From positions 124,001-188,000 of the forward strand of contig CBFFRP010000077.1 of the NCBI GenBank assembly GCA_965644295.1: a DNA stretch of 64,000 nt, read 5' to 3'. The DNA is from Paraphysomonas bandaiensis. Its lineage: Eukaryota > Protista > Chrysophyceae. Numbering within the stretch: position 1 is the first letter of the stretch; every line of letters starts with the position of its first letter. A model generated the notes under the pieces. That model made no database searches. It had not been told where the DNA came from and worked only from the letters and a program-made list of their open reading frames with translations. A program made the translations under genes and the position numbers. Positions 1 to 57,179 of this stretch are shown here, in pieces.

Positions 1-1125
1 AAGCGCCTCTGCCCGCGCACACCTATCATATTCGACACAGTGGATGTACACTTCCTCAGAGAGATACGCAAGTTCGACCAGGAAAGGAATGCACTTCTCA
101 CCACACTACAAACTAGTGAAAGACATGCTGCGTTAAGTCGTCTGATGCAGATGGAGTCAAAGCTGATTACAATGACCGACAGAGAGATTAATCTAATGAA
201 GATTGCCAATATAACATACGTGGTGAGTGCCTCTGAATACGAGTTGATCCGTCAGAAAGCTCCAGAAGTGGATGTGCGGATTGTATCAAACATGTACCGC
301 CCACCTGTCAAATTTCTATATAGTGACCCGGTAATGCGTAACGGGGCTATATTTGTGGGGTCCATGTGTCACCCTCCTAATGTGGGTGCTGTGGAGTTCA
401 TCGTGGACGAGATTCTAAGTAACAAAACTTTTCCGTTTGGCTTCAAGATGCACATAGTTGTTTCTCGATCAGCGGAATGCCCAGATACGATTATTGAAAA
501 GGCTGCAGCGCATCGACTAGTCGAGCTGCATAGAGATATCTCCAACGAGGCGCTAGCAGATTTGCATGAACGCGTCAAAGTATGCCTTGCGCCAGTTAAA
601 TATGGTGCAGGGGTGAAAGGCAAGGTGAACTATGCACTGCTGCATGGAGTTCCTGTAATATCCACAGTCGTTGGGGCAGAAGGGATGTACTTAGTGGACG
701 GAGATAGCGTTATGATTGCAGACTCAGGACACGAGTTCTACACATCGTTAATAAAATTATACAGTGATGTTGAGCTCTGGCAGAAACTTCGCGCTGGGGG
801 ACTCAAGGTTATGCAGGAGCATTTCAGCGTAGATGTTGCTCGTCAAACGATACTTCAGAGCTTAAAAGATTTAAATATAGAAATGGACTCAAAATCATGG
901 ATTTGCCCGTATCGATCCCAATGCCCGTCACTGTTAAAACACGGGGGATTGACGGTCTTTCACTCGAATAAACCAGATAAGTTGTATGTAGGCGAGCCGC
1001 CGAAAGAAAAGATTGAATTCTTTAAGCTAGAATATATGTACCCATGGATAGTGAATAGGACAGCTATAAATGCAAAGAAGCAGAAAAAGTCGATTAGTAG
1101 AGCACTGAGAGGCAATGGAATGTAG
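1..1125 (+). CDS. Glycosyltransferase family 4-like (GT-B) C-terminal part; 5' end lies outside the window
   Basis: Frame is open from base 1 (KRLCPRTPIIFDTVDVHFLRE...). It contains APVKYGAGVKGKVNYALLHGVPVISTVVGAEGM, typical of Glyco_trans_1_4 domains. No intron is needed in this part. Confidence 0.85.
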   Translation, partial: KRLCPRTPIIFDTVDVHFLREIRKFDQERNALLTTLQTSERHAALSRLMQMESKLITMTDREINLMKIANITYVVSASEYELIRQKAPEVDVRIVSNMYRPPVKFLYSDPVMRNGAIFVGSMCHPPNVGAVEFIVDEILSNKTFPFGFKMHIVVSRSAECPDTIIEKAAAHRLVELHRDISNEALADLHERVKVCLAPVKYGAGVKGKVNYALLHGVPVISTVVGAEGMYLVDGDSVMIADSGHEFYTSLIKLYSDVELWQKLRAGGLKVMQEHFSVDVARQTILQSLKDLNIEMDSKSWICPYRSQCPSLLKHGGLTVFHSNKPDKLYVGEPPKEKIEFFKLEYMYPWIVNRTAINAKKQKKSISRALRGNGM

Positions 1126-1339
1126 TTAGTGGAATAAACGACGATATTTTTGACATTGTACCCTGCATATTAATTTTTAGGCCTCCCCAGAAAATTGGGC
1201 ACTTTGAGCTCGCTGTTTTTTACTTCAGTGGATGCGGGTGGCTGAGTCAACTTTTGACGATTGAAGGAGTTGAAACACTATCTTTAACTACTATTATATT
1301 TTATATTCTTAACTCAATGGCTTTAATTAAATCTTGTCA

Positions 1340-3500
1340 ATCTAGATAGATTTCTACCTGTAGCTAAAACTACTACAAATTCTCATATCCTACTATGTAA
1401 CGCTACGAAAGCTGCTTGTGCGTCACCGCAAGCACCAAGGAGCAACCACATCCGCTCTTTTATGTGAGGGAAGATCTCAACGGACGTGAGTCCTTGGAGT
1501 GCAGATGCGTTTGGTCAGGGGAGCGCCCTTGGGGTAGGGATCTGCAGGGCTTCGGGAGGCACATCTGAATTTGTGAGTCGAGTATTCCTAGCCTGAGATA
1601 CATGGGCGAGGGGGTAGATTGCGGCTTTGGCGTGTCTGGAGGCGGCGCGAGCTACGAGTTGGGCTAGCTGGCGGAGACGGCGCCGTGGTATTTCCACTTG
1701 TGTAGGGGTTGGGGGAAAGGTACACGTGTGGGGTAGTAGGTATCCTCGCTGCACCTAGAAGTCGAAGAACCAGCAGTTTCCGTCGTGTGCTTCTACGTTT
1801 CTGACATGTTCTGGGGGGGAGTCTATGTGACCCCTTGGGTGTCGTAACGTAGCGGCGGCTGCGGTATTGAATGATTTATTTGGCTGCAGCATAAAGCGGA
1901 TGGAGAAGATCGACAACTGCCTTTTCTAGAGTACGAAGTCCTCGCGAGTTTAAAGCACAGTTGTATTGCGCTCCAAAAACATTCTCTTGCTGGGCCTCAG
2001 AGATAGTCCCCGTCCAGAATCGTTCAACCTGCGGTATTGAGGTATTCCAGGCTCTGCTGGAGAGTCGCTTGAGAATGGCGGCACCATATTGGTAGAGTCG
2101 GGACTCGTTGTCGTTCCCGTAGTCTCTCATTGGTCTGAAAGGCAGATTCTCGTATCTGGGAGATGGAGTCGTGTGGACAATCAAGGCATATATGTTTGAG
2201 AAACAAGAGTCGAAAACCACAGCCAGAGCATGTGGCTTTGTTCAGATCTAGGCCATATTTCGTTTTTTAGTCCGGTTCCTACCAAAGCTGAAGGATTGTT
2301 CCATGTCAGGGCTGTATTGAGTATGCGCTGATCTGCCTCAATCCTCCAGAGCCAGTTTATGCAGAAGTAAAGCACCACTCTCTTTTCAGTAACCAAGTGC
2401 ACGATGATGATTATGACAGTAGATTTGGTCGCGAAGCGTAGTATCATTCTCAAGTGTCCATTGATTACAAAGGGTTTGGAAATCAATGATCATGTGGTAT
2501 GTGACGTACGGCCGGCGTGTTCAGAAAGATGCCAGGGCCATTTTCCGGACGTGACAATGCCTTCCATGGCGGCTCGGGCAACATAAATTTCACAGTAAGT
2601 GTAATTGTGACGGCCTAGCTTGCGGTCAACTTTAAACCAGTCACCGCCTTCAACCGTGTCTGCTATGTAAATTCCTTTGTTGTCATATGTCCATTCAGCT
2701 TCGTTAGTGGTGCGCCTCTCGGGGGGGTGGGAGCGGACCCAGATAATGTTCCTCTTGGTACACGTCTTATTAGTTGCCGCGATGCTCTCAAGGAAGACCT
2801 CTTTAGCACAATTCCCTAGCGCACGTCATGAGGAGGGCTTCCCCAGCTCTCATGCGAACAGCCTTACAATCAGTATTGGTAGGAATGTGGGCGGGGTGCT
2901 CGTGAGGAGAGTATGAGAGCTATGACAACTGCTAATAGTTTGTACGCAGAAGGGTTTGTGCCTGGTATATATCTCACAGGAGTCGTTAGGCATAGAATTA
3001 TAGCGCGACCGCATCCCCAATCACATTCCGGTGAAAGCCAAATGGCAGCCGCACCTTGACTGTCAATTGTACTAGAGTACCTAAAGCGACAAATCCCCAT
3101 ATTTCGATAATAGCTACAACAATTGTACACCATACTAAAAATTGTAGACGCCTGAGAATTCTTCTCATTGGCATGCTGTGTGTATTATACGAGGTACATA
3201 ATCCTGATAATTACGACGTGACCCAAACTCTGAAAACACTGGGTGCCACTGCTCCAAATCACCTTTAGCATCAGATCGCAGTTTGAACTCTCCAGTAAAA
3301 TTCTTGGAGTATTACTGCAAATCCTGGTTTTAATGATGGGTCACTTGTACAACAGTGATTATGATCTTCCACATCAGAGAAAGGATGGAATACAAGTAGT
3401 AGTGTTTGATGATTTGATTTTAAAAGTTGATTAATCATTGCGGTTTCCCTAAAACTGTGTATTGGAAAGATAGTTTCTGTTCGAACCAATTTTTCAACTT
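1340..3500 (-). mobile_element. Degenerate 5'-truncated non-LTR retrotransposon (RNase H + Cys/His zinc-knuckle region + 3' end)
   Basis: Minus-strand frames broken by stops and frameshifts give RNase H-like motifs (GAAAIW...PSAYKLLAVVIAL; IIWVRSHPPERR...NKGIYIAD, ~2640-3130), then a C..CG/HICLDCP knuckle (~2170-2240). The ORF ends RMWLLLGACGDAQAAFVALHSRI*, which recurs at ~25100 and ~57600. Confidence 0.7.
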
Positions 3501-3757: not shown

Positions 3758-5475
3758 CTACATTGAATTGTTCGTGCGGTCAATGCTTTCGTTCTCAATG
3801 GCATGTTCCCTTTCCACTATTTTCGCTTCACTAGTCAACGGTTCCTTACCATCAGTGGTTTGTATATCATACGTTTGTACTAAGACCTCTGCACCAGTTA
3901 AGCATGATGCTCCTTTTGAAGAGTTTTCCACCTCAAGAGTCATGTTCTCCGCATGACAGTCCCCGTCCGTGTCGTTGCCCTCAATGTTCAGATGAGCCTC
4001 CAACCCTCCCGTTGTACAACCACTCACATGAACATCCCGTAATGTAATCTCTACTTTAGTTTCGACTTCCTCCATCTTGCCCTTTATGCATGCTCGCTCC
4101 TCTTTCCTTCTCCTCTCGTACAACATCATATCTCTGACAAAGCCTTGGGCTTTCACACGTAAAACAGAAGCACCACGGAAGTGAGAACTCTGCAGCCACA
4201 ATGCCAGTGCCATAAAAGAGCTCGGCCAAATAGTAGCAATTCCATAGCTGCGAAATAGCATCAGCATTCCTAAGCAAAACCAATACTCCAGCCACCCCTC
4301 AGCTGTAACTGGTACAACACTTGTTTTCTCTTTCTTTGGTTTGTTAGAGGGTTGGAGGTCAACCACTGTACGTCCACTCTTGTAGGCCGGAAGCAATATA
4401 GCTACAATGACCACACCTACGCTAGCGATTCTAAATGGCATAAACATGAACATTACTGATATCAACACAGCTCCGCTGTCTTCCAATAATCCACGAATGG
4501 ACTCAACAATACTGCCTGGAATGCCAATGAATCGCATTGCTGTTAGTACACCGCCCAATGACGACCCAACATCAGCGGCAGGGATTTGGTTTACGTAGTA
4601 TTGTATAATGGGATGGGTCCATTCAAACACCAGGTCTGCACATACAGGGGACGCTTGTACCCACACAGCCACCTACACCACACATGAATAAGCATCACGC
4701 ATATACTGCAATATAGTGGACAACGCATAACAACAATTATATACTACAATACTGTACTCACCACCATCGCAAATTCGCGAAGAGTAGGAAGTATACGCAG
4801 AAGTATACCAGAAAATGGGACGATTTCAGAAAGAGTAGAACAGGTGAAGTACAGCGACAACACAATCCAAGTTACCAGTCGATCTCTGTAGGTGGAAGTC
4901 TTTTCCATCCGCACACTCTGAAACGTACGATACATCGGCGCAACTAGTGTAAAGAAAGGTAGCACACGAGGTGAGGACAACGGAAGAAGAAATTTATTCC
5001 CAAAGTAGGCTAGCAGGCCGGAAGCAGAGAAAAAAAGCACATGTGGTGCTACTCGAGCGGCAGTACGAGACTTTCGGGATATATTTTCTTCGAGTCGTTT
5101 CCATGCAGAATAAATACCTTTACGAAACAAGAAGAAAACTAATGCAGTGGTGATTATGAGAAGTTCGACGACAATATCCCAAAATCCTAACTGACTTCTA
5201 TGGAATTCAATGACGGCCGAACTACAGCTAACCAACAGAGGGAAACATAAGAACACTACTTTGAGAATAAAAATGATCAAGTAATATAAAACAGACGATA
5301 TTGCGTGTAGAAAGGCCAGAAAACTAACTATGAGTTCATATATAGACGCATAAAATCTGGAGAATATAATCTCATCGTATAGAGATGGATTCAGCACCAC
5401 AAACTCGTAGAGATGAGGAAAGCTATCTTGAAATCTTAAGATGACATCAAATACTTGGGAGTATGTGATAAGCAT
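3758..5475 (-). CDS. Membrane protein with two tandem TB2/DP1-HVA22 (REEP/Yop1-like) domains; exons 5475-4762, 4672-3758
   Basis: A GT-AG intron (4761-4673) joins two ORFs. There are two copies of the pattern P.Y.(T/S)...L.(T/Y)W...(AVWVQ/ALWLQ..FRGA), which resembles TB2_DP1_HVA22, and an acidic tail. The ATG is in a CACAATG context. Confidence 0.7.
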
Positions 5476-5911
5476 TGTGGACTGTGCTGGCAGCAACAGA
5501 GATGTGTCAAGTCTATGACATCCTGTTCCTGGTGTTGTCACGGTGTTGATATTCACAATGAGAGCCGGAATACTCGTAGTGGTATATACAGTAGGTATAG
5601 TATACCGTATATACTGTACTGTACCTATATGACTATACAGTACCAGTATATATAGCATGTGGTGGAATACTGAAAATACCAAGGTACATCTATACACTCC
5701 ACATATACACAGTACTGGAGTACATACTCTGAAGGAGCAACATACATACATATACACACCATATGTATCTTCATCGAAATCGAAGTGAGTAATGGAAGTG
5801 TTTGCAGGCATGTCCAGCAGTATCAATATTCTATCGCACTGTACAGTGAAATTTCCTGGGATCACTTTACCCTCCTTATAGTTCTATTAGTACAGTGCCT
5901 CTATTTGTAGT

Positions 5912-8900
5912 ATGTTTGTATATATTCTCCTCTGCATTATTCTATTCACTATATCCTACTGGATCCTCTCCAAACCCTCCTCCTCCGAGGACAGGAAAAC
6001 TCCAACCACAGTCAAGCCCGTGCAGTCGTTTGATGATGGTTTACTAAGTGAAAGAAGGCTTCGTCCAGTCTATAATAAAATATCTAATAAAGTTGGACAA
6101 TCCTTTAAATGGCTCAAGAATAAAGCGAAGAATAAATTCGCATCTTCTGGGAGAACACGGGGAGATGGACTGAACAGCATTTTCTCTGAGACGAATGTAT
6201 TGGAGGGTCCATCACCGGTACAGTCTAATCTAGATGCTGCTATTGCGAGTGTTCGATCAGAGATACTAGACGCTCACCAGGAGTTCGCATTTGCTTCACT
6301 TTTTAAATGGGGAATATTTGAGGGTGCAGAGCTCTCGATTTTGAATGATTTATGTTCGAATGCGACACTAGTTTCTCGAAAAAAAGGTGATATGATTGTT
6401 GCTGAAAATGACACCAAAAGTGAACTATTATATGTGATCAAATCTGGTAGCTGTGAAATTTCATTTTTAATGCCTAATGGGTCACGTGAATCGGTATATG
6501 AACTCTCTGAGGGAAGTGTCGTAGCAAGCGTAGTGGATGTTATATCGTGGATTATACGTAGCGACGTTCGGCGGGAGATTGCTGTTCGATGTGCATGTGA
6601 CTGTGAGCTTGTAGCCATACCCTCACCCCGTGACGAGAAGGGGAGATTTCAGTCCCGGCTACACGCGACGTCATTTGCACGTATAGTACGTATGCTTTTG
6701 ATTCGATTCAACCGTACAACAATCACCACTGCACTCTTTTACCTTGGTCTTGCAGAACATTTTATCCCTTCTTTTCCTAGAATTCCTATCCCTGAGGAGC
6801 TTGTGGAACTATGCAAGAGCTCTTCTTGTGGAGGTAGATCAAGAGTCGGGTCAGAAGATGAACTGCTCATGAGTGATGTTTCTCATTCCCGGTCCGTGCT
6901 TTTGGTGAGAGAAGCAATTGCTGGTTTGCTTGGGGTTGATGCTTCGGACATAAATCTACCACAGTCGAGTACATCGGCATGTTCCCACTCGTCTTCTTCC
7001 GGGTTACGTCATGATGAGGAAGAGGAACTGGAGGATGGCGATAGAGAGAGTACACTGAGTATTCCCCCTCCGATTGCTATCACGAGAGCACTATCATTTG
7101 ATTCGACAATGGCTCAAGGAGGTGATACCACTCAGCGCATTTCGCAGGACTCGTACTACTCTTCACATGCACCTAGAGGTCAAGGCAGAAGTAAGTCAGG
7201 GCTCTGTATGATGGCTGCCGGTCAATCTATATTGGATGTTGACCCAGTGCCAGGCCTTTACGTCATTGTTTCTGGTCGAATCCAGATCCAGTTTTTAGGA
7301 ACGAATAACCTTAAACGCATGTCCAACCTCCATAAGCCGCGACGAAATGTTGCTCCCGTACAGGCACTGTTATCACAAACCTCCACTGGTGCCACTGCAA
7401 TCCTCAGCGAAGGAGAAGTAATTGGTCAAATCGCACTTCTCGCTGGTACAAGTTCAGAATGGTACGGACGACGGGATGGAAGTGCACCTCCTGTTATGAG
7501 TGTTATTGCTCTGGAGGACAGTTTTCTCCTCCGTGTGCCGGTGAAATCTTATGAGAAAGCCCTTGCAGCTCACCCTCAAGTAATATTCCATCTCAGTAGT
7601 CGAATTTTGTCTGCGTTGCCACCAATCATACGTCTATTTGATCTATGCACGAAATGGGTTCGTCTGAATGGCGGGGATGATATTGTCACGCGAGGACAGG
7701 GAGCTACTGGAGAACTGTATATAGTTCTGTGTGGACGCTTGCGGGTCGTTATCCGGCGTGGAGAAGAGGATGGTCACGAGTCAGACTTGAGAGAGGCATA
7801 TCCCAGGACGGACGGAGGCTATTTGGGTCGTACTGGAGACTGGGTTATAGGACGAGGGACCCTTATTGGGGACACTGAATTACTTACCGGCGAGCCATTT
7901 CGACACACAGTGCGAGCAATTAGACAGACAGCTTTGTCTCGTGTGCCTGTTAAGTTGTTGGACTTTTTGTCTCGAAACTACCCCATTATACTCACGTATA
8001 TCGTCAAGAATGTATCAGACAAGCAAGCTGCTGCCCTCTCTAGTACTATATCTCCTTCTATGCATCAGACTTCAGGGGGGATTGATGTTGTGTCTTCAAA
8101 AACTATTATGGTGTGTCCAATATCAGGCTCCGTACCTCTAGATCTTGTGTGTTCCACCCTTAGAATATGTCTTGAGCGATGTGTAAGAAAAGCATTGCTG
8201 GTTACTTCCAGTGATGCCGCGGCGGTATTTGGGGGAGTTCTTGATGGTCTATCGGAATATGAGCTTGTATTGACTGTGGGAAGTTGGATGCATCAAATGG
8301 AGTTGGATTATGATATCGTTATATATCAGGCTGATTGGACTCATAGTGCTTGGAATCGATTATGTGTAACACAGTGCGATGAGATTCTTCTCGTTGCCAA
8401 TGCACTTGATGATCCTGAGGTAATAAGCGATGGTACTACTAAGTGGCTTTTTGTAAGACCATATATATAGATTATATACCCACTAGAAGAGTGTCTTCAC
8501 ACTGAGAGTAAGTTAATTCCGAAAACACTTGTGATGCTTTTCGTAAACCCGGCGGAGGATGCCCATCCATCCGGCACTAGAAAATGGATAGAGAGGAGGG
8601 AAGGAGTCGAGAGACACGTTCATGTAAGCATTTGTTCGAGGTTCTGATTTATGAATTCGCTTTTTGATACTGTATCGATTATTTTTAGGTTCGATTGCAT
8701 ACAAGCAACCAGCGCTTTGACACGCATCACTATCGGTCTGATTTTAATCGCTTGGCAAGAATCCTTACAGACACAGCTGTGGGTGTTGTACTGGGGGGCG
8801 GAGGCGCACGGGGAATATCTCATATAGGGGTTCTTCAGGCACTAGAAGAGCGTGGGATACCAGTGGATATGATTGGTGGCACTTCTATAGGATCATTCAT

Positions 8901-10166
8901 TGGAGGATTATACTCCTGTGAACAAAGTGTTTTGAAAGTTAATCCTATAGCCAAATCTTGGGCCAGTAAACTAGCATCCCTGTGGTTTTATTTCGAAGGC
9001 AAGCATGTTGTTGCGTATGCGATGAAGTGTTGTTTTGTCTAATTTGTAGTGCATGTTATTCTTTCAGATCTCACGTTTCCAGTGACGTCCTACTTTAACG
9101 GTTACAATTTCAGCCGTGCCATTCGACATGTTTTCTCTGGTCGAAAAATTGAAGATTTCTGGCTGAATTACTTCTGTGTTACAACAGATCTTACTAGTCA
9201 CACTGAGCGTATTCATGTTAATGGTACAGCTTCACGGTATGTATACTCGATTCTTTAATAAAAACGTTGACACGTGTTGGTGCAGATATATACGGGCATC
9301 TATGAGTCTCGCAAACTTTTTGCCGCCTTTGTGTGACGTCGATCCCAGAGACAGCTCCTGCCACTACTTGGTAATATCGTAAGCTTTGATCCTTTCAAGT
9401 AAACTCTTTGTACTAGGTTGATGGTGGGTATGTTAACACTGTACCTGTGGATATTATGAAGTACAGGTCAGTAATTGTCACACTTACTTGTACCATAAAT
9501 ACACGTGGTATATATAAAGTAGACAATCGGAACGTATTTGAGTATCGTTGATATGGAAGAACTAAATGAATATGCCGTAGGTTTGGGGCCCGTGTTATTA
9601 TTGCTGTGGATGTGAGCGGTGAATGGTCACTTGCGGCGACTCATAACTACGGTGATTTTTTGAGTGGGGCTTCTGTTCTATTGTCACGATGGAACCCATT
9701 CAGTCAAGCGCAGAATGTACGGTGATACCATTATATGCCCAAGATATATAGAGTGTTATATCACGACCTTCATTTTCATATAGCCTAATATGAATTTTGA
9801 TATTAGGTTCCCTCAATGGCTGACATCGCCACACAAATTGCTTTTGTCTCTGCATGCCGTCAAATCCAACGAGTTAAAGGAATTGCCGATCTATATATCG
9901 TGCCACCAATTAATCAGTACTCTGTATTAGATTTTGGTAACTTCGAAGAGATTCGACAGGTATTATAGTATTACGCTTTATGTAGTTACTACTTTCATAT
10001 ATTGATGCGCTGGTTGTAGGTGGGACTAGATTATGGTCGAGCCTGTGTAGACGAGTGGTTAATGAATTTGGCGCCAGAGGAAGGGAAACCGAAATACAAG
10101 TGGATGAAAAGACGGACACATACGCAGTCTCAGTCTGGCATGCAGGGGGAAAATGTCCCTCATTGA
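5912..10166 (+). CDS. NTE1: Neuropathy target esterase-like patatin phospholipase with cNMP-binding domains (multi-exon)
   Basis: N-terminal TM anchor and three cNMP-like domains ([21 protein letters not shown]). Patatin motifs GGGGARG, GTSIG and HYL|VDGGY (intron-split) are present. Short introns rebuild a continuous frame ending at TGA 10164-10166. Confidence 0.93.
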
Positions 10167-10739
10167 ATAACATTAGATTACTCGGCCATAATGGGCGCAT
10201 TACAGTTAAGTTGTTATAGTTAGCGTTCAGGGTAGACCTTATAATGTAATTGAGTGTAAATATTATTTCAATGATGTGATGTATGTGGATTAGCTATTGC
10301 TCGGTTTGCGAAAGTTTGTCATAGTTCACTTCATACCATGGTTTCTACTAGAGTTTCTAGTACTTTATAATCTCCGTTCACACAGCAAAAGTGTATCATG
10401 TGGGACTACACACACACAGTGACGACAAAAGGAGTGGTAAATGGGATTTATTTCTTTTGTGGCCAGAGTGTGTGGTGTGTGGACTTATGATCAGACTACT
10501 GACTGCTGATATATTCACGAGATATTTGTGTGGTGTGATTTATGAGAAACACATAAAGAGATGTCTAGAGGCAAAGATCAGGAATGTTCGAAGGAAGATG
10601 TTAGAGGTACAAGAGCGTTGACTGAGATGATACCAGCTGAAATGTAGGGCTCTACTAGTTTGTCCAATTCGTTTTTTGGTGGTTGCATATCCGTCAGGTA
10701 AGTCTGTGAGGATGTGAAGATTCTACTCACAGCTTTGAA

Positions 10740-11495: not shown

Positions 11496-11918
11496 CTATT
11501 TCACATCTTTCGTGGTATTACATTCCATGTTTGTCGACCAAAAATAATAGCCAACGAGCGATATAATGCATGTCATATATGGAGCAACAAGCTCGTTTGA
11601 AGCTGAAGTGGGGGCTAAGGATGCAATGTAACGTCCATTTACAGCAGTGGACAACCAGTCAAACACAGTCATTACAATATTCATTTTCAACATAAAGCCG
11701 AGTAATGTCCGACTCCCTTTAGGAATATTAAATACTACCGCAAACTGAATAATGGCAATGTAAACAAGCTTGTTGCCGAGCGCTCCAGCGGCCCACAGGA
11801 ACTCTGCAGGATCCACCGCAAAAAAGTTGAAATCAGCAAATAAATATATATAGCCTGATAAAAGGGAATGCAATGCAATTAAATAGAGACATATCACAGC
11901 AATAGTGGAGTCACTCAT
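11496..11918 (-). CDS. Small multi-pass (~4 TM) membrane protein of unknown function
   Basis: Intronless 140-aa ORF with four hydrophobic segments. The ATG is in a CCAATG context and the gene is divergent from the desaturase. Confidence 0.65.
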   Translation of the reverse strand: MSDSTIAVICLYLIALHSLLSGYIYLFADFNFFAVDPAEFLWAAGALGNKLVYIAIIQFAVVFNIPKGSRTLLGFMLKMNIVMTVFDWLSTAVNGRYIASLAPTSASNELVAPYMTCIISLVGYYFWSTNMECNTTKDVK

Positions 11919-21353: not shown

Positions 21354-21574
21354 AACGCTCTATGATGGAATAGACAACAGTTGTGTCTGATATATATGAG
21401 CACTAGCAAGGGGCTCTTATATAACCCCCTATAATTCTCTTACTAGTGCATGTAGTGATCAGTCAGTTCTCCAATATATGAAGGTTACTGATGCCTATAT
21501 ATAACTATATGAAACAGCAGCTCATAGATAGAGTGAAACATGTCTAGATGTACTCCATGGTACTGCGACACATA

Positions 21575-21585
21575 TACAGCAGTAC
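21575..21585. promoter_or_regulatory. Candidate promoter element TACAGCAGTAC (exact copies also at 26528, 55684, 62198)
   Basis: I saw the exact 11-mer four times, each in a region upstream of a start codon. Shorter CAGTAC/GTACTG variants cluster in the other divergent spacers. Confidence 0.5.
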
Positions 21586-43700: not shown

Positions 43701-46700
43701 CAGAAATGTGGCAACGAATGGACTGGAGCCAGACCTTGTCGGGTGAGAATACTTCAAGCCAAGTGCACAAGGGGAAAGGTCTTGGTCTTTCACAGATTCA
43801 ATATTTACTCGCACAATTCTTAGTAATGTTACGCCAATAGAAAGAAGGGAAGTAAGAGATAGTTTTCCAGGGCCACTGTTGCTCTGTGATATTGATATTA
43901 GCCTGAGAATTTGACGCATACACGAGTTAAGTAGCAAAAATGTCAATACATGGGGATCTGATATTGCGAGAAAACCAGGAGATTTCAACTGAACATCATA
44001 ATACTTGCTTGTTGTCAAAACTTTCGGGCCTTTACTGACTTTCCAACCCAGAAAATTCGAACAAGACATATAAAGCTTCAGGCAAAGCCGAGCCAACCCC
44101 TGTTGCAAAGTATAACGTACTGATGTTGAAGGTAAGTCAGCTAGAGAGACTAGTATCGATTCAGGTTCTGTGACAGCATCTATACTTGTATTGAAATTTG
44201 TGAGAGGGGGTGGAGATATATCACGCATGGGTTCGAACCGCGACCACTCAAAATCGCCCAGTAGAGTACCGTGGCCAGGCTTCCAGTTGTGCTCTACTTG
44301 CGCCAAGTCATAAGCCACACTACCATGTCCTTCATCAAGGCGCCAGTACGCACACAGCCGTTTCTCTGACCCTGTCAAAGCAGAACGACTGCAACTGTCA
44401 GTGATATCCTGCATGGACCTCGATGACGACCAGACTCTCACATCGCATATTCCACCAACCCAACCGTCAACAACACCGCTGAATTCGTAACGACTGCAAT
44501 CTGCAGGAGAAGGAGAGTCACCACGCGCAGATGGTACATCTTCTGATCCGGCAAGAGAAGATACCTCGCTCATTTCGTTTCTGTCATCTTTACTCTCAGG
44601 AAAAGCGGTAGTATCGTACGAGAAGTTCTCTTTCGATTCAGAGGGTAGCGACGACTCATCTCTCGTGAATGTGATGGTGGCTCCAATGCAAAACATCTGC
44701 TTCAAGTTTTTTGGAGTGGCTATCTTTTCTTTTCGAGGCATACTTACTACTACCTTATCGATGACGATTGCCACAGTGCTTCTCGAAGTAGAGTATACGA
44801 CAGATATATTGTGCCATTTATTCGGTTTGAAAGTGCCATCAGGGGATTGATATATCTTACCAAATACGTCACAGTATACGGCTCCAGTGCCATCTACGAA
44901 TACAGCATTTACACGGGAATGTTTTTTCCCCGTAAAACTTAGAAGGGAGTATCGTTTTCCTGAAAGATCTGTATCATCCACAGGCAGATCCAGTCGAGCA
45001 CTTAACTCGATACAAAAGCTATGGGTAGGAGTAATTTTATCAAGAATTTTAGGATTTCCAAGAATATGACCAACCCCAGAATCACTTTTTGAAGAATTTA
45101 GTCGAATGCACACTGGTTTCAGCGGGGCCCTAACATCAACAACATCTGAATATATCTCTGATTCAGAAATGACACATTTCGTTGCTTCCATAGATTCTCT
45201 CGACTTATTATGCTTCATGGCAAATTCAGGTATATCACTTTGAGCATATATTTTGAAGTTGAAACCACACCCTGGAGCAGTTGATGCCACAGGTACCATT
45301 CCTTTTAATCCAATATCAACGTTGCATATCGTTGGGTTCCCATGCTCCACGCCATTTACGAATACGCGAATAAGATTATTATCTGTATCTAATAGACAGC
45401 CCACTGTATCATCCACTTTCCATGATCTAGGAGAAGACGTGGTATCGTTCCTATCACCGACTGTTTCGTCAGAAGCGATGGTGTCAGCAAAACAAGGAAG
45501 TAGTTGTCCACCGAGAGCTATTGCCTCCTGAGAGGCTTTTTCGCGTACAGCAGCCATTACTCCAGCTCCAGCCTCCTCATCAAATAATCTCTCCAAACCC
45601 ACGAACTCCCCGTCATAGGACACTACTTGCTGCGGAGTTGGCACCATTCTTTCTGTTGATGCCACTTGAAGAAGTTGATCGACATTATCCGCTGACATTC
45701 CGGTGGTAATCATTCGCTGCTTGACAGCCTCTCTTGGGACTCCCAAACGAAGTAATTTAACAAAAGATGCATATTCAGATCCTTCATGCACGGATAGTGT
45801 ACTGGACGTTTTAATTCCTTCATTCAGTGATTCGTATTTTTCAGATGATGTAGTGGTCGCCGATGGGACACTCTCTTTGATCACTGCACTGGCCTCCTCG
45901 TCAATGTCCTCAAGAGTCAGGGCAAGAGCCTCCTGAAGAGCACGGGCAGCAGCCTCTGCATTGTGGTACACCGCCCCAGCAAAGCCATCATACCCCCAAG
46001 ACTCGTAAAAGGCTCCGGGAGGACTTGAAACAGTAGAAGTAGAACAACAACACTGTGCCCATCCGATCCGCATGCCTCTAGGTTCGCCGCCCTTCAATAC
46101 ACCTTCGAAGTAATAGCAGCCGGTATTCCGGGCTGCCATACAACCAGTAATGAATCCACCAGTCGGACCCCACACCTCCAGCTGTCGGACTTTCTCTGGT
46201 ATACCATAGCTTGGAACAAATCGCGGACGAGACGCAAACGACTGCAGCCGCTGTACTTCGCTCTCGTGGGCTAAAATACTCTTCAAGTCCTCCGGTCCAG
46301 GTACTAACAACGATTCAATGAAGCTCAAACTGTTACAGCTAATTGTTCCCTGAAAAGAATGCAGCGTATTATCCTCGATAACTGAAAGTAAAGCTTTTAT
46401 TAGAACTAGAATAGCACGCAGATCTCTCTGTTGTCCGACTTTTTCACAAAATTCATCCATTTCGTCAGAAAGTGAAGAAGAATCTATTCCCCGCCTTTCT
46501 CGCCTATATTTGTAGGTAGTGAATGTATGACTTTGTAGGGCTCGTGCAAGAACTGTGTTTCTTTCGACTGTACTAACAGTTTTCAGTAATGTCGCAAATA
46601 ATCTGGACTGGGAGGAGGATGAGGTATGAGAATTGACATCGCCCGTTCGTCCACCAAAGTTTTTAGCTAAGAATTGTACTATTTTAGCCTTTTCATCGTC

Positions 46701-47018
46701 TGTAATATCGATCAAACTTTCGGTTTTTTTTCGAAGCTTCAGAACAGTTGAGCACTGCCATATTAGATCTTCAAGAGCCTCGCTCGCATCATCTTTTCCA
46801 CAGAGCTGATGTAATTATCAATAAAATATATAATAACATGTGAAAATAGAAGAAATCACCTGAGAAAGTTCAGACAACTGTTTTGTCCATTTCTGGGATG
46901 AAAGAAAAGAATCATGCAGGAGGGCGTCAATGTCCTCCTAATAAAATGATATCAGGATCCGCATTGCATTATATTCAATGATTACCTGCTGAATTCGGTG
47001 GCTACTCAAACTACTCAT
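28705..47018 (-). CDS. Giant HECT E3 ubiquitin ligase (~6036 aa) with SPRY x4, LamG/ConA x2, MIB-HERC2, UBA, SH3b-like repeats and HECT; exons 47018-46986, 46937-46860, 46805-29137, 29079-28848, 28803-28705
   Basis: HECT motifs VKFTGEGVDDHGGPYR and LPIAQTCFFSLSLPKYSS (catalytic Cys). MIB-HERC2 motif VERGPDW..GTEDGG; UBA motif LEQMGFPK; SPRY motifs YYFEG and GVHYWEV. Exon lengths sum to 18111 nt (6037 codons including the stop). Confidence 0.93.
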
Positions 47019-47552
47019 TGTAAGTAGAAAAGCCAAACAAATTCATTGTATTGTATTGCAAAATTAATGATTCTTGCCAGGACCTTGCAAGAGTTGTATT
47101 AATTAATACTTAATATCTGCTTCTGATGGCACCAGCGGAAAATCTCCACACACAAGGAGAAAAGAATGAAGAAGCAAAGATCACAACACAATAAAATACA
47201 CATTTTTTATATACGTACTGTACATACACATACACCATGGGACAGCAGTATATACAGTACTGCGGATATACAGTATTTTTTCACCTTCTTTTTTTTTGCT
47301 GAAAATGTTCTTGTTGGACGAGTATATTGTATCTGCTGTATTCCATGTATTTTTGGTCTGTCTCCAAATAAATACAAACTGAAACCAGACCAGTCATCTT
47401 TCGTTCATTGGCGTGTTATGTTACTGCCATTCGACCACTAACTCATCAATAGCAGTGACAGTAACACAAGTTATATAACCGATTACGATAGATTGGAGTA
47501 TTTGACACTCTGTATTAAAGTGTGGTGACATACACAATCAGTGGAATACGCA

Positions 47553-48334
47553 ATGTCTGCTGCCGATAATCCTGTAGTTGATGACATTATTGAAAAGGCG
47601 ATGCGAAAGTGTAATTACGACAATCAGTCCACTGCACCCACTGGATTTGCAAAGTTGCACGAACGCCTTCTGCGAGCTGGGGAAATCAAAGGCGGAAATT
47701 TACAAAATAGAAATAGATTTGGTCAGAATGAAACATGGAAATCAGGTTCTCCAGTCCCACGAATGATGTTTTAATTTGACATATGACTACTTTGTAGAAA
47801 ATGAAATAGAAAAGGCTCAAAAAAGTAGTGTTCTATATAGCTCCATTGGAAACAGTGCACCGTCATTGAAAAAAGAAAAGGCTGATTCTAAAGCAACATT
47901 GGGTAAAGGATGGTTCGATATGGAGGTGGTGGAAATGGCGTTTGCGTGTCATTGATTTTTAATTTATTAACACAGCCCATGGTTATTGACGAAGCTTTAA
48001 AGCGAGATATTAAAGTGATCAGGATGAGAAACTATCTAGACGCCAAGAGGTAAACTTTATTGCTGTATACTAGCATTGTGATATGTTTCTCCGCAGATTT
48101 TACAAGAACCCAGATAAAATTGGTAAAGTACTGCACACTGGTACTGTGATTGAAGGGAGTGGAGAATCAAGAGCTGCAAGACTAACAAATAAACAGCGTA
48201 AACAGAGTCTATTAGAAGAAGTCCTTGCGGACAAGAAGTCGAGGCAGTATTCAAAAAAGAAGTATTTGGAAATACAAAAAGACAAGTCCAATAAAAAGAG
48301 AACCTATAGGAAGCCTCTGCGAGCGAAGTATTAG
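47553..48334 (+). CDS. FCF2: Fcf2 pre-rRNA processing protein (DNTTIP2/TdIF2-like), 4 exons
   Basis: Spliced translation: LGKGWFDME|PMVIDEALKRDIKVIRMRNYLDAKR|FYK...GTVIEG...RLTNKQRKQSLLEEVLAD...YSKKKYLEIQ. Confidence 0.9.
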
Positions 48335-50677: not shown

Positions 50678-50680
50678 CTC

Positions 50681-54187: not shown

Positions 54188-55533
54188 CTAGTCCACCGCG
54201 ATCAAAATACACGATGCATTGTCTGGTGCGTACCCTGCATCCAAAAACAAGTGTAAATCTAATGCCTTGTCAACACGAAGGTACATCACGTAGATATAGT
54301 GAGCCAACAAGAAGCTAAATAAAAAGCAGGACACAAAACCAAGCGGCACTTACTATTCTTTTTCCAATAATCTGAAACAGTTGCACGAAGACATAAATCG
54401 CGAGCGGCAGTTGTCATCATCTCGTTTAGATCGGCTCGATTCGCTATAAGGTTTTCTTCACAAGGTCCCTCCCTGTACAAAGCATGAAGCAATATATACT
54501 AAGTGTTGTGAATAAGTACTTTCTGTTTCATACGGTCATGTGTATTTTACGAGCACACATATATTTATATACTTGCATATACATATATCAATATATTATC
54601 GTTCAGATGACAGGGTGATCACCTCATGGCTGTAGCATTCGCCTTTGGGTTACAATGTGGACGCCTCAAATCAAGGTGCTGCCTAATTATTTTAAAGACT
54701 TCAGAGGGTCTAAAAGCATCCCATACTCCATCTGAAGCAAGGACAACCATCCGAAAATCTTTGAAAAGCCGGTAGGTCTGCATTTCGCCATGATGATGAA
54801 TCACTGTTCCTTTGATACCTCCGAGTAGGGGCAATTTCGCATAAAAATCGCCAAACGAGCGGGTAACGATGAGTCCTCCAGGGTAAACTCTCAACGGCGT
54901 GTGAATAGGCCGAAAGAAAAAGCAGCACGGTATCATAGATGATTGGGGGGGAGATTGCTCTACCACCGCCCCTGAGTTTCGGCATCGCGAAACCTCGGCG
55001 GGGTTCGACGTGGAGTGGTCCTCTGTCACTTTGGCGTGACTTCCATCTGGACGCTCAATGAATGCAGAACTATCACCACAGTTGACTACAAATAATTGAT
55101 GTCCTGAGATTAAACACACAGTAGCCGTGGACCCGTCACGCAGCACGCCGTATTCAGTCTTGAGGTATTTGTAGAGTTTATCATCCATTCGGCGCCAGGT
55201 TTCTTGCAATGCAAGGCCAGGGTTAGAGCAAATCAAGGGGTGCTGTGCTAGTGACTTGTGGAATTGTAGGGCCAAAAACTTTGAAGCTTCTCCGCCTCCG
55301 TGACCTTTAAGCAGGAGTGGTAAGTTAACATGAGGTCATCTGAAGAGACACTAGGCAAAGTTACCGTCAAAAATAGCACAATATATCCTCATATCATTGT
55401 TAGGAGGATTAGATATGTACTTGTTGAGATTAACACACACCGCAAAGTCCTCCTGTGTCTCTTTCCATCCACGTTCTAAGGCACAGCCAATGTTAACAGA
55501 CAGTGACCTGTTACTGGGACTGATTTTGCTCAT
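54188..55533 (-). CDS. PP2C/PPM-family protein phosphatase, 4 exons
   Basis: Motifs RGWKETQED, AIFD|GHGG, DGSTATV, VNCGDS, TRSFGD and LASDGVWD; terminal exon PDNASCILI. Confidence 0.9.
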
Positions 55534-56018
55534 AGAGGTCACTATGACATTACCTTATACTACAGGGGACATATTTGCAATACTATGGTGAAAGATATCA
55601 GTTCCAGAAGTCATGAGCACATGTTCGAGGAATTCATCAAGAGGCAGTTAGTGTCTTCTTCTTGTTCTAAATACGTGGTAACATACAGCAGTACCAGTAC
55701 GAGATACACGAGGAGAAGGTATCGGAATCTTCGAATAGTGATAAAATAATTAGAAAATAGGCCTTTTTATCACTGTTTTCTATTTTTTAAAAGAAAGTTC
55801 TGATTTTTATTACAACTGGACTGATATTTCGGATATTGTTCTCGTTCACAGGAGTCTGGAGGGCAATAGTTGCTTATACTCATGCCATGCTAACTGACAT
55901 CTATGATCTGCTTATACTTTAGAATGATGTAAGTTTCATAGTGATTACTGTACGATGAATAACATGCGTATAACTCTTCAGTTATTATTACTTATACACA
56001 ACTATCATTTATAAGACG

Positions 56019-57179
56019 ATGTTTCACATCATATGTTACTTACTATTACTTTTTCTGTCTCTTTGTTGCAATGCTCATAAACCAATAGCCCTTGTTCATG
56101 TTGGGCCCCATAAAGCAGGATCAACTTATGTTCAATCACTGTTGCTCTTATTGGAGTCTTCATTACAAGAGGAGGGTATAAAGGTCATTAAAAATGAAGA
56201 GTATACATCTGATATCTTTTCACCGGACTCTAATTTGGTATATTTGGGAAAGTCATTGATGGATGCAGGGAAAGCTAATGAAAATGTACTGCTGAGATCT
56301 GCACATAGAGTCCTATCGGATCACTTACACAATAATCGAAGTGTTATATTATCTGCAGAAATATTTGATTCGCAGTCTATAAATTTGGGCGTATTTGTTA
56401 GACTTCTTAGTCATTTTCGTGTGACAATTGCTATTGTTCATCGCAATTGGCTTTCAATGTTGATATCGACTTATTTTCAAGAGTGTAGAATGCTACGTGG
56501 TGTTATAAAACGCTGTCGTAATATTCCAGAAAGTAAAGAAGTCTCATTTGAAAACTTTGTTGTATACAATAACCTCACCTCTTCTGTATCAGTCTTGGCA
56601 ATGGAACGACAAGCACTATCTGTTGCCAATCGGTATGCCAATCACTTCGGAGCAAACAATATCCGCATACTTGATCTGGAAGGTCTTGTGAGCGGCGGTT
56701 CGGACATATTTCTAGCATTCCTTGATCTGTTAAACCCAAGTGAGAAATTGAAACAAACGGCAGTCAGTACAGTCCAATCTGTGGATGCATCTAACGTTGG
56801 ATATTCAATGGATTACAACCAAATATTTCGTGCTGCTACTTCCAAAGGCCTGGTACCACCAGAGTGTAATATGGTGGGGCAACCTAGTTGGGAGGCCTGG
56901 TCTGAAATTCCTGATAACGAGCGTAGAGAGTTTCCCAAAAAATGTACGCGGCAAGAAATTTTGGACGTACTTGTACGACAGGCTCTGAGGTTGGATACAT
57001 CTATACGTGAGATGTGGGCGCAATCGATTGTAGGTGGTAGTCGAGTGGCGGCTGAAGAAGCTATACAGAAGGCACAAAATGATGTACGTCTTTGTGCTGT
57101 AGATGAAAAGGCTTTTTTCAGTTCAAAATATTGGGTAAACCTTGTAAAGGAAGAGATAAGGAGAAAATGCACTGATTGA
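56019..57179 (+). CDS. Secreted P-loop/sulfotransferase-like protein (intronless)
   Basis: Signal-peptide-like N-terminus; HVGPHKAGSTYVQ (PSB-loop-like), ILSAEIF and R...MLISTYFQ. Confidence 0.7.
   Translation: MFHIICYLLLLFLSLCCNAHKPIALVHVGPHKAGSTYVQSLLLLLESSLQEEGIKVIKNEEYTSDIFSPDSNLVYLGKSLMDAGKANENVLLRSAHRVLSDHLHNNRSVILSAEIFDSQSINLGVFVRLLSHFRVTIAIVHRNWLSMLISTYFQECRMLRGVIKRCRNIPESKEVSFENFVVYNNLTSSVSVLAMERQALSVANRYANHFGANNIRILDLEGLVSGGSDIFLAFLDLLNPSEKLKQTAVSTVQSVDASNVGYSMDYNQIFRAATSKGLVPPECNMVGQPSWEAWSEIPDNERREFPKKCTRQEILDVLVRQALRLDTSIREMWAQSIVGGSRVAAEEAIQKAQNDVRLCAVDEKAFFSSKYWVNLVKEEIRRKCTD

What the first reader, a model, noticed from the sequence alone, without database searches (positions are those of the whole stretch)
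1..57179. Fifteen consecutive genes strictly alternate strand: the region is built from head-to-head gene pairs
Seen: the order is GT+, HVA22-, NTE1+, membrane-, desaturase+, galactose-binding-, kinase+, EF-hand-, MFS+, Tudor-like-, RTRAF+, HECT-, FCF2+, PP2C-, sulfotransferase-like+. That is 14 switches in a row, which is (1/2)^14 under random orientation (post hoc). Only UCHL3 breaks the run. The seven divergent ATG-ATG spacers are narrow in size (436, 520, 536, 742, 354, 534 and 485 bp), whereas convergent intervals range from 0.6 to 5.9 kb. Inference: transcription here may rely on obligately bidirectional promoters, with the gene pair as the basic unit of the genome.
Basis: partly seen in the sequence, partly recalled or inferred. 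Interest (0 to 1): 0.8.

Follow-up and report, generated by a model that had tools for sequence, protein, structure and literature searches.

The report
Alternating gene strands, a genome-wide habit
In this colourless golden alga (Paraphysomonas) nearly every gene points the opposite way from its neighbours, so the 15-gene run is real but typical of the genome, a stronger form of a habit known from related algae, and the genes are not locked into obligatory pairs.

Summary
The seven ATG-to-ATG spacers (354-742 bp) and the 0.6-5.9 kb tail-to-tail gaps are reproduced. After UCHL3 the alternation resumes with an FAD oxidoreductase on the minus strand, giving 15 of 16 junctions opposite.

It is not a special locus. 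An independent 100-kb stretch of the same genome shows 14 of 18 junctions opposite (13 of 20 at worst). The scan already found this on other DNA of this genome (s1-452862). Published work describes the same habit in Ectocarpus (about 60%) and Nannochloropsis.

Head-to-head gaps form a distinct promoter class. TACAGCAG is 14 times denser there than in tail-to-tail gaps, one gap holds an (ATGT)43 array, and the NTE1 transcript starts inside its gap. Tail-to-tail gaps hold transposons and a tRNA gene.

"Obligate" pairing is not supported. Tandem junctions exist. Partner identity changes between relatives, although HVA22-NTE1 is conserved in one relative.

Caveats: the "Tudor-like" gene belongs to a dispersed ~590-bp repeat family, and a 2.6-kb gap (1126-3757) with coding-like GC is unresolved.

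The parts
1..1125 (+). Glycosyltransferase group 1 gene (3' part; its start lies upstream of the window)
   Evidence: Pfam Glyco_trans_1_4, E 6.6e-9; coding score
1126..3757 (.). Tail-to-tail gap of 2.6 kb. Bases 1126-3489 have coding-like GC (about 46%) and are tiled by 100-120 aa ORFs on the minus strand. Unresolved: a missed gene here would add one tandem junction.
   Evidence: No Pfam hit, no ab initio gene, no match to the L021 relative. Only 1333-1464 is a repeat.
3758..5475 (-). HVA22/TB2/DP1-like membrane protein gene: two exons and two HVA22-like motifs
   Evidence: Weak Pfam TB2_DP1_HVA22 hit; translations; orthologue in L021 at 41-60% identity, tblastx E 2e-122
5476..5911 (.). Head-to-head gap of 436 bp. 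The NTE1 cDNA contig starts at 5801 and CAGCAGTA lies at 5815.
5801..10261 (+). NTE1 (neuropathy target esterase-like) transcript: 8 exons, ATG at 5912, introns of 38-110 nt
   Evidence: cDNA contig L023, 99.8-100% identical and spliced; Pfam cNMP_binding, NTE_Ploop and Patatin
11496..11918 (-). Small 4-helix membrane protein gene (140 aa)
   Evidence: A 99% identical protein, plus homologues at 43, 40 and 32%; translation
12439..13272 (+). Fatty-acid hydroxylase/desaturase-type gene; the head-to-head gap 11919-12438 is 520 bp
   Evidence: Pfam FA_hydroxylase, E 9.5e-19; ATG position
14180..14856 (.). Retroposon-like dispersed repeat in a tail-to-tail gap
   Evidence: 39 or more genomic copies at 77-87% identity
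15101..16332 (-). F5/8 type C (galactose-binding-like) gene, 2 exons
   Evidence: Pfam F5_F8_type_C; model
16869..18183 (+). Protein kinase-like gene with a 49-nt intron; the head-to-head gap 16333-16868 is 536 bp
   Evidence: Pfam Pkinase; intron sequence
19924..21353 (-). EF-hand protein gene (multi-exon ab initio model)
   Evidence: Pfam EF-hand families on 21006-21353; model
21354..22095 (.). Head-to-head gap of 742 bp with an exact TACAGCAGTAC at 21575
22096..24083 (+). MFS transporter gene
   Evidence: Pfam MFS_1, E 1.8e-19
25591..26348 (-). It is one copy of a dispersed ~590-bp family.
   Evidence: Homologues at 63, 48 and 42%; 30 or more DNA copies at 68-83% identity; 59 protein-level pieces, many open and some with stops; no Pfam hit
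26357..26538 (.). (ATGT)43 microsatellite followed directly by TACAGCAGTAC, in the 354-bp head-to-head gap
26704..27706 (+). RTRAF (RLL family) gene
   Evidence: Pfam RLL; sequence of exon 1; model
28705..47018 (-). Giant HECT ubiquitin ligase gene: one 17.6-kb exon plus short terminal exons
   Evidence: 5864-aa ORF; Pfam HECT; 5' exons read from the sequence
47019..47552 (.). Head-to-head gap of 534 bp with CAGCAGTA at 47243 and CTGCTGTA at 47333
47553..48334 (+). FCF2 pre-rRNA processing gene
   Evidence: Pfam Fcf2, E 1.6e-13; start codon
48642..49289 (.). Retroposon-like dispersed repeat in the 5.9-kb tail-to-tail gap
   Evidence: Many copies at 86-93% identity
50605..50678 (+). tRNA-Ala(AGC) gene in the tail-to-tail gap
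   Evidence: ARAGORN; Rfam tRNA, 55 bits
50777..52491 (.). Young 1.7-kb element with 27-bp terminal inverted repeats. Its ORFs account for the plus-strand ORFs in this gap.
   Evidence: Copies at 98-100% identity on many contigs; inverted repeats
54188..55533 (-). PP2C phosphatase gene
   Evidence: Pfam PP2C, E 1.3e-28; model
55534..56018 (.). Head-to-head gap of 485 bp with an exact TACAGCAGTAC at 55684
56019..57179 (+).
   Evidence: 100% identity to Paraphysomonas MMETSP1103 peptide P0008 and no other homologue at E <= 1e-10; no Pfam hit
59051..59902 (+). UCH (peptidase C12) gene. This is the one tandem junction; the 1.9-kb gap upstream holds repeat fragments.
   Evidence: Pfam Peptidase_C12, E 1e-49; repeats at 57608-58433
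60504..61838 (-). FAD-dependent oxidoreductase (DAO) gene; the alternation resumes here
   Evidence: Pfam DAO on both exons

Best explanation
The window is an ordinary stretch of a Paraphysomonas (colourless chrysophyte) genome. In this genome gene orientation alternates at roughly 75-90% of junctions. This is a stronger form of the alternation already described in ochrophyte algae.

Alternation divides intergenic DNA into two classes.

1. Short promoter gaps. They measure 0.35-0.75 kb from ATG to ATG here. Both genes start transcription from them. 5' UTRs of about 100 nt or more would leave only a few hundred untranscribed bases, probably one shared open-chromatin region. These gaps carry lineage-specific motifs (TACAGCAGTAC, GTATAC) and sometimes (ATGT)n arrays.

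2. Variable terminator gaps of 0.6-5.9 kb. These absorb transposons and a tRNA gene.

Shown: the gene strands, the gap sizes, the motif and transposon partition, one transcript 5' end, the tandem exceptions, and partner turnover in relatives.

Inferred: the arrangement is kept because it is economical and avoids read-through from an upstream gene into a downstream promoter. It is not kept because specific partners must be co-transcribed. Each gap acts as two adjacent promoters in one open region. It is a default, not an obligation.
For: - Window: 15 of 16 junctions are opposite, with every gene supported by Pfam, homology or a transcript.
- Independent sample G000:C1:100001-200000: 14 of 18 junctions are opposite once two Copia elements and one Gypsy element are removed. 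Pooled, 29 of 34, p = 1.9e-5.
- Tandem gaps are long: 0.95-4.3 kb, against 0.35-0.9 kb for most divergent gaps.
- TACAGCAG occurs at 0.88 per kb in divergent gaps, 0.06 in convergent gaps, 0.25 in tandem gaps and 0.05 in genes, at equal GC.
- All four exact TACAGCAGTAC copies in the window lie in divergent gaps.
- Genome-wide the 12-mer occurs 709 times, against 5 for the reversed control.
- The NTE1 cDNA starts 111 nt before its ATG, inside the 436-bp gap.
- Transposons and the tRNA gene lie in tail-to-tail gaps.
- In relatives' contigs the architecture persists while partners change.
- Literature. Ectocarpus: 61.7% divergent, median divergent gap 409 bp against 2293 bp for tandem, shared nucleosome-free region, no co-expression (10.1101/2020.03.09.980763). 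Ectocarpales: more than 60% alternating (10.1101/2024.02.19.579948). Nannochloropsis gaditana: longest alternating run is 15 genes (PMC3566019).
Against: - Only 164 kb of a 62.6-Mb genome was examined.
- My gene blocks merge same-strand exons, which inflates alternation. An unmerged count in C1 gives 13 of 20.
- The ab initio coding signal is weak and missed two real genes.
- The 'Tudor-like' unit may be a mobile element. Dropping it gives 13 of 15 in the window.
- The gap 1126-3757 may hide a gene.
- Divergent gaps in C1 are far more variable (335-3328 bp) than in the window.
- There are no TSS, chromatin or expression data, so 'shared open region' and 'avoiding read-through' rest on analogy with Ectocarpus.
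Confidence: 0.75

Rival explanations
1. One reading: promoters are obligately bidirectional and the divergent gene pair is the basic, indivisible unit of transcription and of genome evolution.
For: - 14 consecutive switches with narrow spacers of 354-742 bp.
- A quasi-palindromic element (TACWGCWGTA form) lies roughly mid-gap in several pairs, for example 180 and 176 bp from the two ATGs at 26528.
- The HVA22-NTE1 pair is conserved in a relative whose NTE1 is only 43% identical.
Against: - Tandem junctions exist: sulfoT to UCH here, and 4 of 18 in C1.
- Partner identity changes for the membrane-protein gene and, in two of the three relatives with upstream sequence, for NTE1.
- The motif is found within 400 bp upstream of only 16 of 34 genes.
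- Ectocarpus pairs are not co-expressed (10.1101/2020.03.09.980763).
Confidence: 0.1
2. Alternation is a mostly neutral by-product of how this genome rearranges and where insertions are tolerated. Transposons and breakpoints survive only in 3'-3' gaps, and inversions between them flip genes. Promoter sharing is not selected.
For: - The large repeats in the window lie in tail-to-tail gaps. The ~590-bp unit carrying the 'Tudor-like' ORF abuts a head-to-head gap, and repeat fragments lie in the one tandem gap.
- The LTR elements in C1 sit beside gene 3' ends or next to each other.
- Partner turnover shows that rearrangement is frequent.
Against: - Insertion tolerance alone does not create alternation.
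- One repeat fragment lies in a divergent gap (C1 52413-52739).
- The same bias recurs in distant ochrophytes with very different repeat loads (PMC3566019; 10.1101/2024.02.19.579948).
Confidence: 0.12
3. Artefact or chance: the run comes from false or missed gene models, or is a lucky local run in a randomly oriented genome.
For: - The statistic is post hoc.
- The coding signal is weak.
- One unit is a repeat-family member.
- The gap 1126-3757 is unresolved.
Against: - Every gene has independent support.
- The independent 100 kb shows the same bias.
- Even the most conservative pooled count, 26 of 35, gives p = 0.003.
Confidence: 0.03

Closest known systems
Ectocarpus and other brown algae: strong tendency of adjacent genes to lie on opposite strands (Cock et al. 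2010 as cited in bioRxiv 10.1101/2020.03.09.980763 and 10.1101/2024.02.19.579948)
   Same: Both are ochrophyte stramenopiles with an excess of opposite-strand neighbours. Divergent gaps are short (median 409 bp there, about 350-750 bp here) and much shorter than tandem gaps (2293 bp there, about 1-4 kb here). Specific partners need not be functionally coupled.
   Different: The degree differs: about 60% there, against about 75-90% in the 164 kb sampled here. The genome here is smaller, with 40-110-nt introns. The organism is a colourless phagotroph. The promoter-gap motifs and (ATGT)n arrays look lineage-specific, since they are absent from relatives' gaps. No chromatin or expression data exist here.
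Nannochloropsis gaditana gene orientation bias and bidirectional promoters (Jinkerson et al. 2013, PMC3566019)
   Same: [quoted passage not shown] Many pairs have less than 1 kb between them. The idea that a single bidirectional promoter controls both genes was proposed there, and one promoter was shown to be active in both directions.
   Different: There the longest alternating run in the whole genome is 15 genes (two instances). That paper found no such bias in non-photosynthetic stramenopiles. Paraphysomonas is non-photosynthetic but descends from algae, so the trait follows ancestry rather than photosynthesis.
Bidirectional promoters of mammals and other eukaryotes (divergent TSSs less than 1 kb apart; e.g. 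PMC1487180, PMC2871058)
   Same: The operational definition is met by all seven pairs here, taking ATG-to-ATG distance as an upper bound.
   Different: In mammals they cover about 10% of genes, are tied to CpG islands, and are often conserved and co-expressed. Here they are the default arrangement, and partners are mostly not conserved.

Membership tests
Ochrophyte-type alternating gene orientation (Ectocarpus / Nannochloropsis pattern) | The share of adjacent genes on opposite strands is significantly above 0.5 | tested here: met
   Window 15 of 16, independent C1 sample 14 of 18, pooled 29 of 34 (p = 1.9e-5). The conservative count is 26 of 35 (p = 0.003). Only 164 kb was sampled.
Ochrophyte-type alternating gene orientation (Ectocarpus / Nannochloropsis pattern) | Divergent intergenic regions are shorter than tandem ones | tested here: met
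   Divergent ATG-to-ATG gaps are 354-742 bp in the window, and 335-896 bp for four of seven in C1. Tandem gaps are 0.95, 1.9, 1.9, 3.0 and 4.3 kb. Three C1 divergent gaps are long (2.3-3.3 kb).
Ochrophyte-type alternating gene orientation (Ectocarpus / Nannochloropsis pattern) | The organism is an ochrophyte stramenopile | tested here: met
   A window ORF is 100% identical to a peptide of Paraphysomonas MMETSP1103, taxid 36769, Chrysophyceae.
Ochrophyte-type alternating gene orientation (Ectocarpus / Nannochloropsis pattern) | Close divergent pairs share one nucleosome-depleted region and TSS histone marks | not testable with these tools
   This needs MNase, ATAC or ChIP data.
Bidirectional promoter (operational definition) | Two divergent TSSs lie less than 1 kb apart | tested here: met
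   All seven ATG-to-ATG distances are at most 742 bp, so the TSSs are closer still. The NTE1 cDNA 5' end lies 111 nt upstream of its ATG.
Bidirectional promoter (operational definition) | One shared element drives transcription in both directions | not testable with these tools
   Only indirect hints exist. The motif is enriched in these gaps but shows no consistent orientation or distance rule.
   UCH follows the sulfoT-like gene in tandem. There are 4 tandem junctions in C1 between genes with strong coding scores or different Pfam domains.
   HVA22-NTE1 is conserved in L021 and probably L020. NTE1 pairs with LMF1 in L019 and with GT90 in L022. The membrane-protein gene pairs with IFT81 in L015 and with an unknown gene in L014, never with the FA hydroxylase. 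The relatives are distant (32-55% identity) and their contigs are short.

The most novel reading that the evidence does not exclude
Paraphysomonas has pushed alternation close to saturation, with at least 85% of junctions opposite. It also has its own promoter-gap code: a TSS-proximal, quasi-palindromic TACAGCAGTAC element (about 700 copies, 140 times the control), GTATAC, and (TATG/ATGT)n arrays. One shared nucleosome-free gap per gene pair would then be the default unit of Pol II initiation. That would make this organism the clearest natural system for studying why compact eukaryotic genomes avoid tandem genes.
Probability: 0.2. Interest if true: 0.6.

Novelty: new member of a known kind. 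Interest (0 to 1): 0.35.

Why it matters
Alternating gene orientation with shared promoter gaps is known from brown algae and Nannochloropsis, but at about 60% of junctions. A colourless chrysophyte showing about 75-90% adds two things.

First, the habit follows ochrophyte ancestry rather than photosynthesis. Jinkerson et al. saw no such bias in non-photosynthetic stramenopiles.

Second, it offers a more extreme system for asking what forbids tandem genes: read-through interference, economy of open chromatin, or insertion tolerance.

For annotation, the rule 'the next gene is on the other strand' and the motif-rich promoter gaps are useful priors. Short bidirectional spacers may also serve as tools for expressing two genes at once.

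For this locus the result is deflationary. It is typical, not special.

Tried and rejected
1. Genome-wide count. I planned about 1.5 Mb through the fetch from genomes. Half was wasted on a short contig.

2. Ab initio gene finding. I self-trained a 3-periodic Markov model and a splice-aware dynamic programme. The coding signal is weak, about 0.04 nat per nt. A permissive setting chained everything. A strict setting fragmented genes and missed the FA hydroxylase and the 'Tudor-like' ORF. I used it only as support beside Pfam.

3. Possible missed genes in the 5.9-kb gap (minus strand 48867-49226, plus strand 50969-52172). Rejected: they lie in a dispersed repeat and a TIR element.

4. HVA22 extending over the minus-strand ORFs at 1515-3489. 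Rejected: similarity to the L021 orthologue stops at 4103, and both proteins end about 110 aa later.

5. A directional model of the motif, with one oriented copy 150-240 nt upstream of each ATG. Rejected after listing all hits, because both orientations occur at similar distances.

6. Motif conservation in relatives' gaps: none found.

7. The HVA22 transcript 5' end. The search for related loci and an exact 30-mer scan of metagenome contigs both found nothing.

8. Own-genome gene calls through the look-up of encoding contigs are not on record.

9. Names. Pfam gives no support for 'Tudor-like' or 'sulfotransferase-like'.

10. The period-3 test of 1879-3489 was ambiguous: 5.2, against 2.3-4.0 for non-coding and 4.8-13.8 for coding sequence.

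All searches were exon by exon, by reference.

Full report
**What the window is.** The window is G000:C77:124001-188000 of a 62.6-Mb assembly in 669 contigs. One of its ORFs (56019-57176) is 100% identical to a peptide from the MMETSP1103 transcriptome of Paraphysomonas, a genus of Chrysophyceae. A 4007-nt JGI contig (L023) aligns to the window at 99.8-100% identity as eight spliced exons of NTE1. The organism is therefore a colourless, silica-scaled chrysophyte flagellate, and at least these two genes are transcribed. Introns are canonical GT-AG and short, 38-110 nt in the cDNA. Nothing in the window looks human.

**Checking the observation.** I searched every gene exon by exon, by reference. 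I never joined exons into a spliced protein.

- GT1 +
- HVA22-like -
- NTE1 +
- FA hydroxylase +
- F5/8C -
- kinase +
- EF-hand -
- MFS +
- RTRAF (RLL) +
- HECT -
- Fcf2 +
- PP2C -
- UCH +

The 140-aa membrane protein (11496-11918, minus strand) has a 99% identical protein and homologues at 43, 40 and 32%. The 'Tudor-like' ORF (25824-26177, minus strand) has homologues at 63, 48 and 42% in marine metagenome contigs.

The seven head-to-head spacers are reproduced from the ATG positions. This includes the 534-bp HECT/FCF2 spacer, which needs two short 5' introns of HECT that I can read in the sequence.

The run therefore resumes after UCH, and 15 of the 16 junctions between the 17 protein genes are opposite.

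**Caveats on the observation.**

(a) The 'Tudor-like' unit is not a plain single-copy gene. The stretch 25591-26178 is one copy of a dispersed family of about 590 bp. The genome holds at least 30 DNA copies at 68-83% identity. At protein level there are 59 matching pieces, many open and several with stop codons. Similarity to a Tara Oceans contig continues past the stop codon. Pfam does not support the name. If the unit is counted as a mobile element, MFS+ and RTRAF+ become tandem neighbours and the window scores 13 of 15.

(b) The GT/HVA22 tail-to-tail gap (1126-3757) is 2.6 kb, not 0.6 kb. Bases 1126-3489 have coding-like GC of about 46% and are tiled by 100-120-aa ORFs on the minus strand. 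They have no Pfam hit, no positive coding score and no match in the relative, and their period-3 signal is ambiguous. A gene hidden there would add one tandem junction.

(c) The 5.9-kb FCF2/PP2C gap is not empty. It holds a retroposon-like repeat (48642-49289), tRNA-Ala(AGC) on the plus strand (50605-50678), and a 1.7-kb element with 27-bp terminal inverted repeats whose genomic copies are 98-100% identical (50777-52491). Another retroposon-like repeat fills part of the FA-hydroxylase/F5/8C gap (14180-14856).

**Is it more than chance, and is it special?** Against random orientation, 14 of 15 has P = 4.9e-4. That is weak for a post hoc pick among roughly 1000 windows.

I therefore took an independent sample, G000:C1:100001-200000, chosen blind. 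I annotated it with long ORFs, a self-trained coding model and 30 Pfam scans. After setting aside two Copia elements and one Gypsy element, the host genes run:
- unknown -
- FHA-PP2C +
- Roc-COR -
- COG8/Dor1 +
- unknown +
- RCC1 -
- kinase +
- esterase +
- unknown -
- unknown -
- SET +
- ankyrin -
- MFS +
- WD40 -
- unknown +
- unknown -
- GDA1 -
- UvrD-type helicase +
- unknown -

That is 14 of 18 junctions opposite (p = 0.015). It is 13 of 20 if every unmerged prediction counts as a gene. Merging same-strand exons biases the count towards alternation, so I give both figures.

Pooled, the result is 29 of 34 (p = 1.9e-5). The conservative count is 26 of 35 (p = 0.003). With a per-junction probability of 0.85, a given stretch of 14 consecutive junctions all alternates with probability about 0.10. 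Runs like this one are therefore expected often. The run is real but typical of the genome.

I treat it as a lead. My support is the C1 sample.

**Two classes of intergenic DNA.** At the same GC (38.4%), head-to-head gaps differ in sequence from tail-to-tail gaps. TACAGCAG occurs at 0.88 per kb against 0.06 per kb. GTATAC occurs at 1.62 against 0.19. Tandem gaps are intermediate.

The 11-mer TACAGCAGTAC has four exact copies in the window (21575, 26528, 55684, 62198). All four lie in head-to-head gaps. Genome-wide the 12-mer ATACAGCAGTAC occurs 364 + 345 times on the two strands, against 2 + 3 for the reversed control, and it sometimes forms 13-14-bp tandem clusters.

The motif or a close variant lies within 400 bp upstream of 16 of 34 ATGs and within 400 bp downstream of 2 of 34 stop codons (Fisher p = 2e-4). 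I found it on these same data, so the regional statistics are post hoc. The genome-wide excess is not.

The NTE1 cDNA contig begins at 5801. That is 111 nt upstream of the ATG and 14 nt upstream of a CAGCAGTA core. This hints that the element sits near the transcription start.

I tested a directional model, with one oriented copy per gene at a fixed distance, and rejected it. The element is absent from the corresponding gaps of relatives.

One gap carries an (ATGT)43 array that abuts the motif. This agrees with earlier notes that such arrays sit in head-to-head gaps.

**Are pairs units?** I tested two genes in environmental contigs of relatives.

NTE1 is head-to-head with a true HVA22 orthologue in L021, and probably in L020. 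NTE1 is 43% identical there. HVA22 is 41-60% identical across five blocks, with tblastx E 2e-122. In L019 the divergent partner is LMF1, and in L022 it is a GT90 glycosyltransferase.

The membrane-protein gene is head-to-head with IFT81 in L015 and with an unknown gene in L014. It is never paired with an FA hydroxylase.

So NTE1 has a divergent upstream neighbour in all three contigs that reach upstream (L019, L021, L022). It has a convergent downstream neighbour in L016, L018 and L019. The membrane-protein gene has a divergent partner in L014 and L015. The architecture persists while the partner usually changes. These contigs are short, their gene calls are automatic, and the relatives are distant. 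This is suggestive, not conclusive.

**Mechanism.** I commit to this explanation at about 0.75. Alternation is a genome-wide default that sorts intergenic DNA into promoter gaps and terminator gaps. In a promoter gap two genes start within a few hundred bases of each other, probably in one open-chromatin region that carries lineage-specific elements. Terminator gaps tolerate insertions.

The arrangement probably persists because it saves regulatory space and keeps read-through transcription away from promoters. That last step is inferred from the Ectocarpus data. There, divergent gaps have a median of 409 bp against 2293 bp for tandem gaps. Pairs closer than about 600 bp share a nucleosome-free region and histone-mark peaks. 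Yet pair members are not co-expressed, with r of about 0.05 (bioRxiv 10.1101/2020.03.09.980763).

These are the tandem junctions with long gaps and partial motif copies upstream of tandem genes (C1 18740 and 44149), together with partner turnover.

**Comparison with what is known.** The habit is published for Ectocarpus and the Ectocarpales, at more than 60% alternating pairs (10.1101/2024.02.19.579948). It is also published for Nannochloropsis gaditana, where the longest alternating run in the whole genome is 15 genes, seen twice. That paper describes the bias as shared by photosynthetic stramenopiles but not apparent in non-photosynthetic ones (PMC3566019).

I found no paper on gene orientation in Paraphysomonas or any other chrysophyte. 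This case is therefore a new and apparently more extreme member of a known kind. The added point is that a secondarily colourless ochrophyte keeps the habit.

**Limits.** Only 0.26% of the genome was examined. There are no TSS, chromatin or expression data beyond one cDNA contig and one peptide. The gene blocks in C1 are partly ab initio. The decisive tests are listed under next steps.

Noticed in passing
window 21575, 26528, 55684, 62198 (exact); variants at 5815, 16381, 47243; C1 sample (L002-L011) 65527 and 67499: TACAGCAGTAC is a strongly over-represented element. The 12-mer ATACAGCAGTAC occurs 709 times in the genome, against 5 for the reversed control, sometimes in 13-14-bp tandem clusters. 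In the sampled DNA it is almost confined to promoter gaps, and one copy lies 14 nt downstream of the 5' end of the NTE1 cDNA. It is a candidate TSS-proximal promoter element. It is absent from relatives' gaps.
   Followed up: partly
window 25591-26348 (-): The 'Tudor-like' ORF is one copy of a dispersed ~590-bp family. The genome holds at least 30 DNA copies at 68-83% identity, many with intact ORFs and some decayed. At least two other copies (contigs C363 and C134) also have an (ATGT)n array a few hundred bp from the ORF's 5' side. Related contigs occur in Tara Oceans data. The poorly conserved middle of the ORF looks like an in-frame 60-nt intron. It could be a non-autonomous mobile element or a fast-amplifying gene family.
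   Followed up: partly
window 50777-52491, next to tRNA-Ala 50605-50678: A 1.7-kb element with 27-bp terminal inverted repeats has many genomic copies at 98-100% identity, so it is a recently active TIR element without an obvious transposase. This copy starts about 100 bp downstream of a tRNA gene. I did not test whether that position is targeted or chance.
   Followed up: no
window 14180-14856 and 48642-49289: Two retroposon-like dispersed repeats of about 650-680 bp, with dozens of copies at 77-93% identity. Both lie in tail-to-tail gaps. They did not align to each other in the local BLAST, so they are probably different families.
   Followed up: partly
window 1126-3489: A unique 2.4-kb stretch with gene-like GC (46%, against 31-40% in other gaps). 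It is tiled by 100-120-aa ORFs on the minus strand and has no family, homologue or clear coding signal. It could be a missed fast-evolving gene, a decayed gene or a non-coding RNA locus.
   Followed up: partly
window 3758-5475 (-): The HVA22/DP1-like protein is unusually long (about 540 aa). It appears to carry two HVA22-like segments and an acidic, non-conserved tail. The same long form is present in the metagenome relative L021.
   Followed up: partly
window 9579-9961 versus L023 3385-3767: In the NTE1 cDNA contig the ORF stops at about window 9788 and reopens at about 9816. Similarity to relatives continues to about 10119. This suggests a retained small intron or an alternative isoform in the transcript assembly.
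   Followed up: no
C1 sample: L004:3415-7893 (+), L009:7811 to L010:2641 (+), L010:4268-8875 (-): Two full-length Copia elements and one Gypsy element with open polyproteins of 1354-1651 aa (stop-to-stop) and flanking LTR-like repeats. The Gypsy and the second Copia lie side by side between a GDA1 gene and a helicase gene.
   Followed up: partly
window 5476-5911: The HVA22/NTE1 promoter gap is packed with GTAC-centred words (GTATAC, TACAGTAC, CTGTACTGTAC). GTATAC is about 8 times denser in head-to-head gaps than in tail-to-tail gaps.
   Followed up: partly
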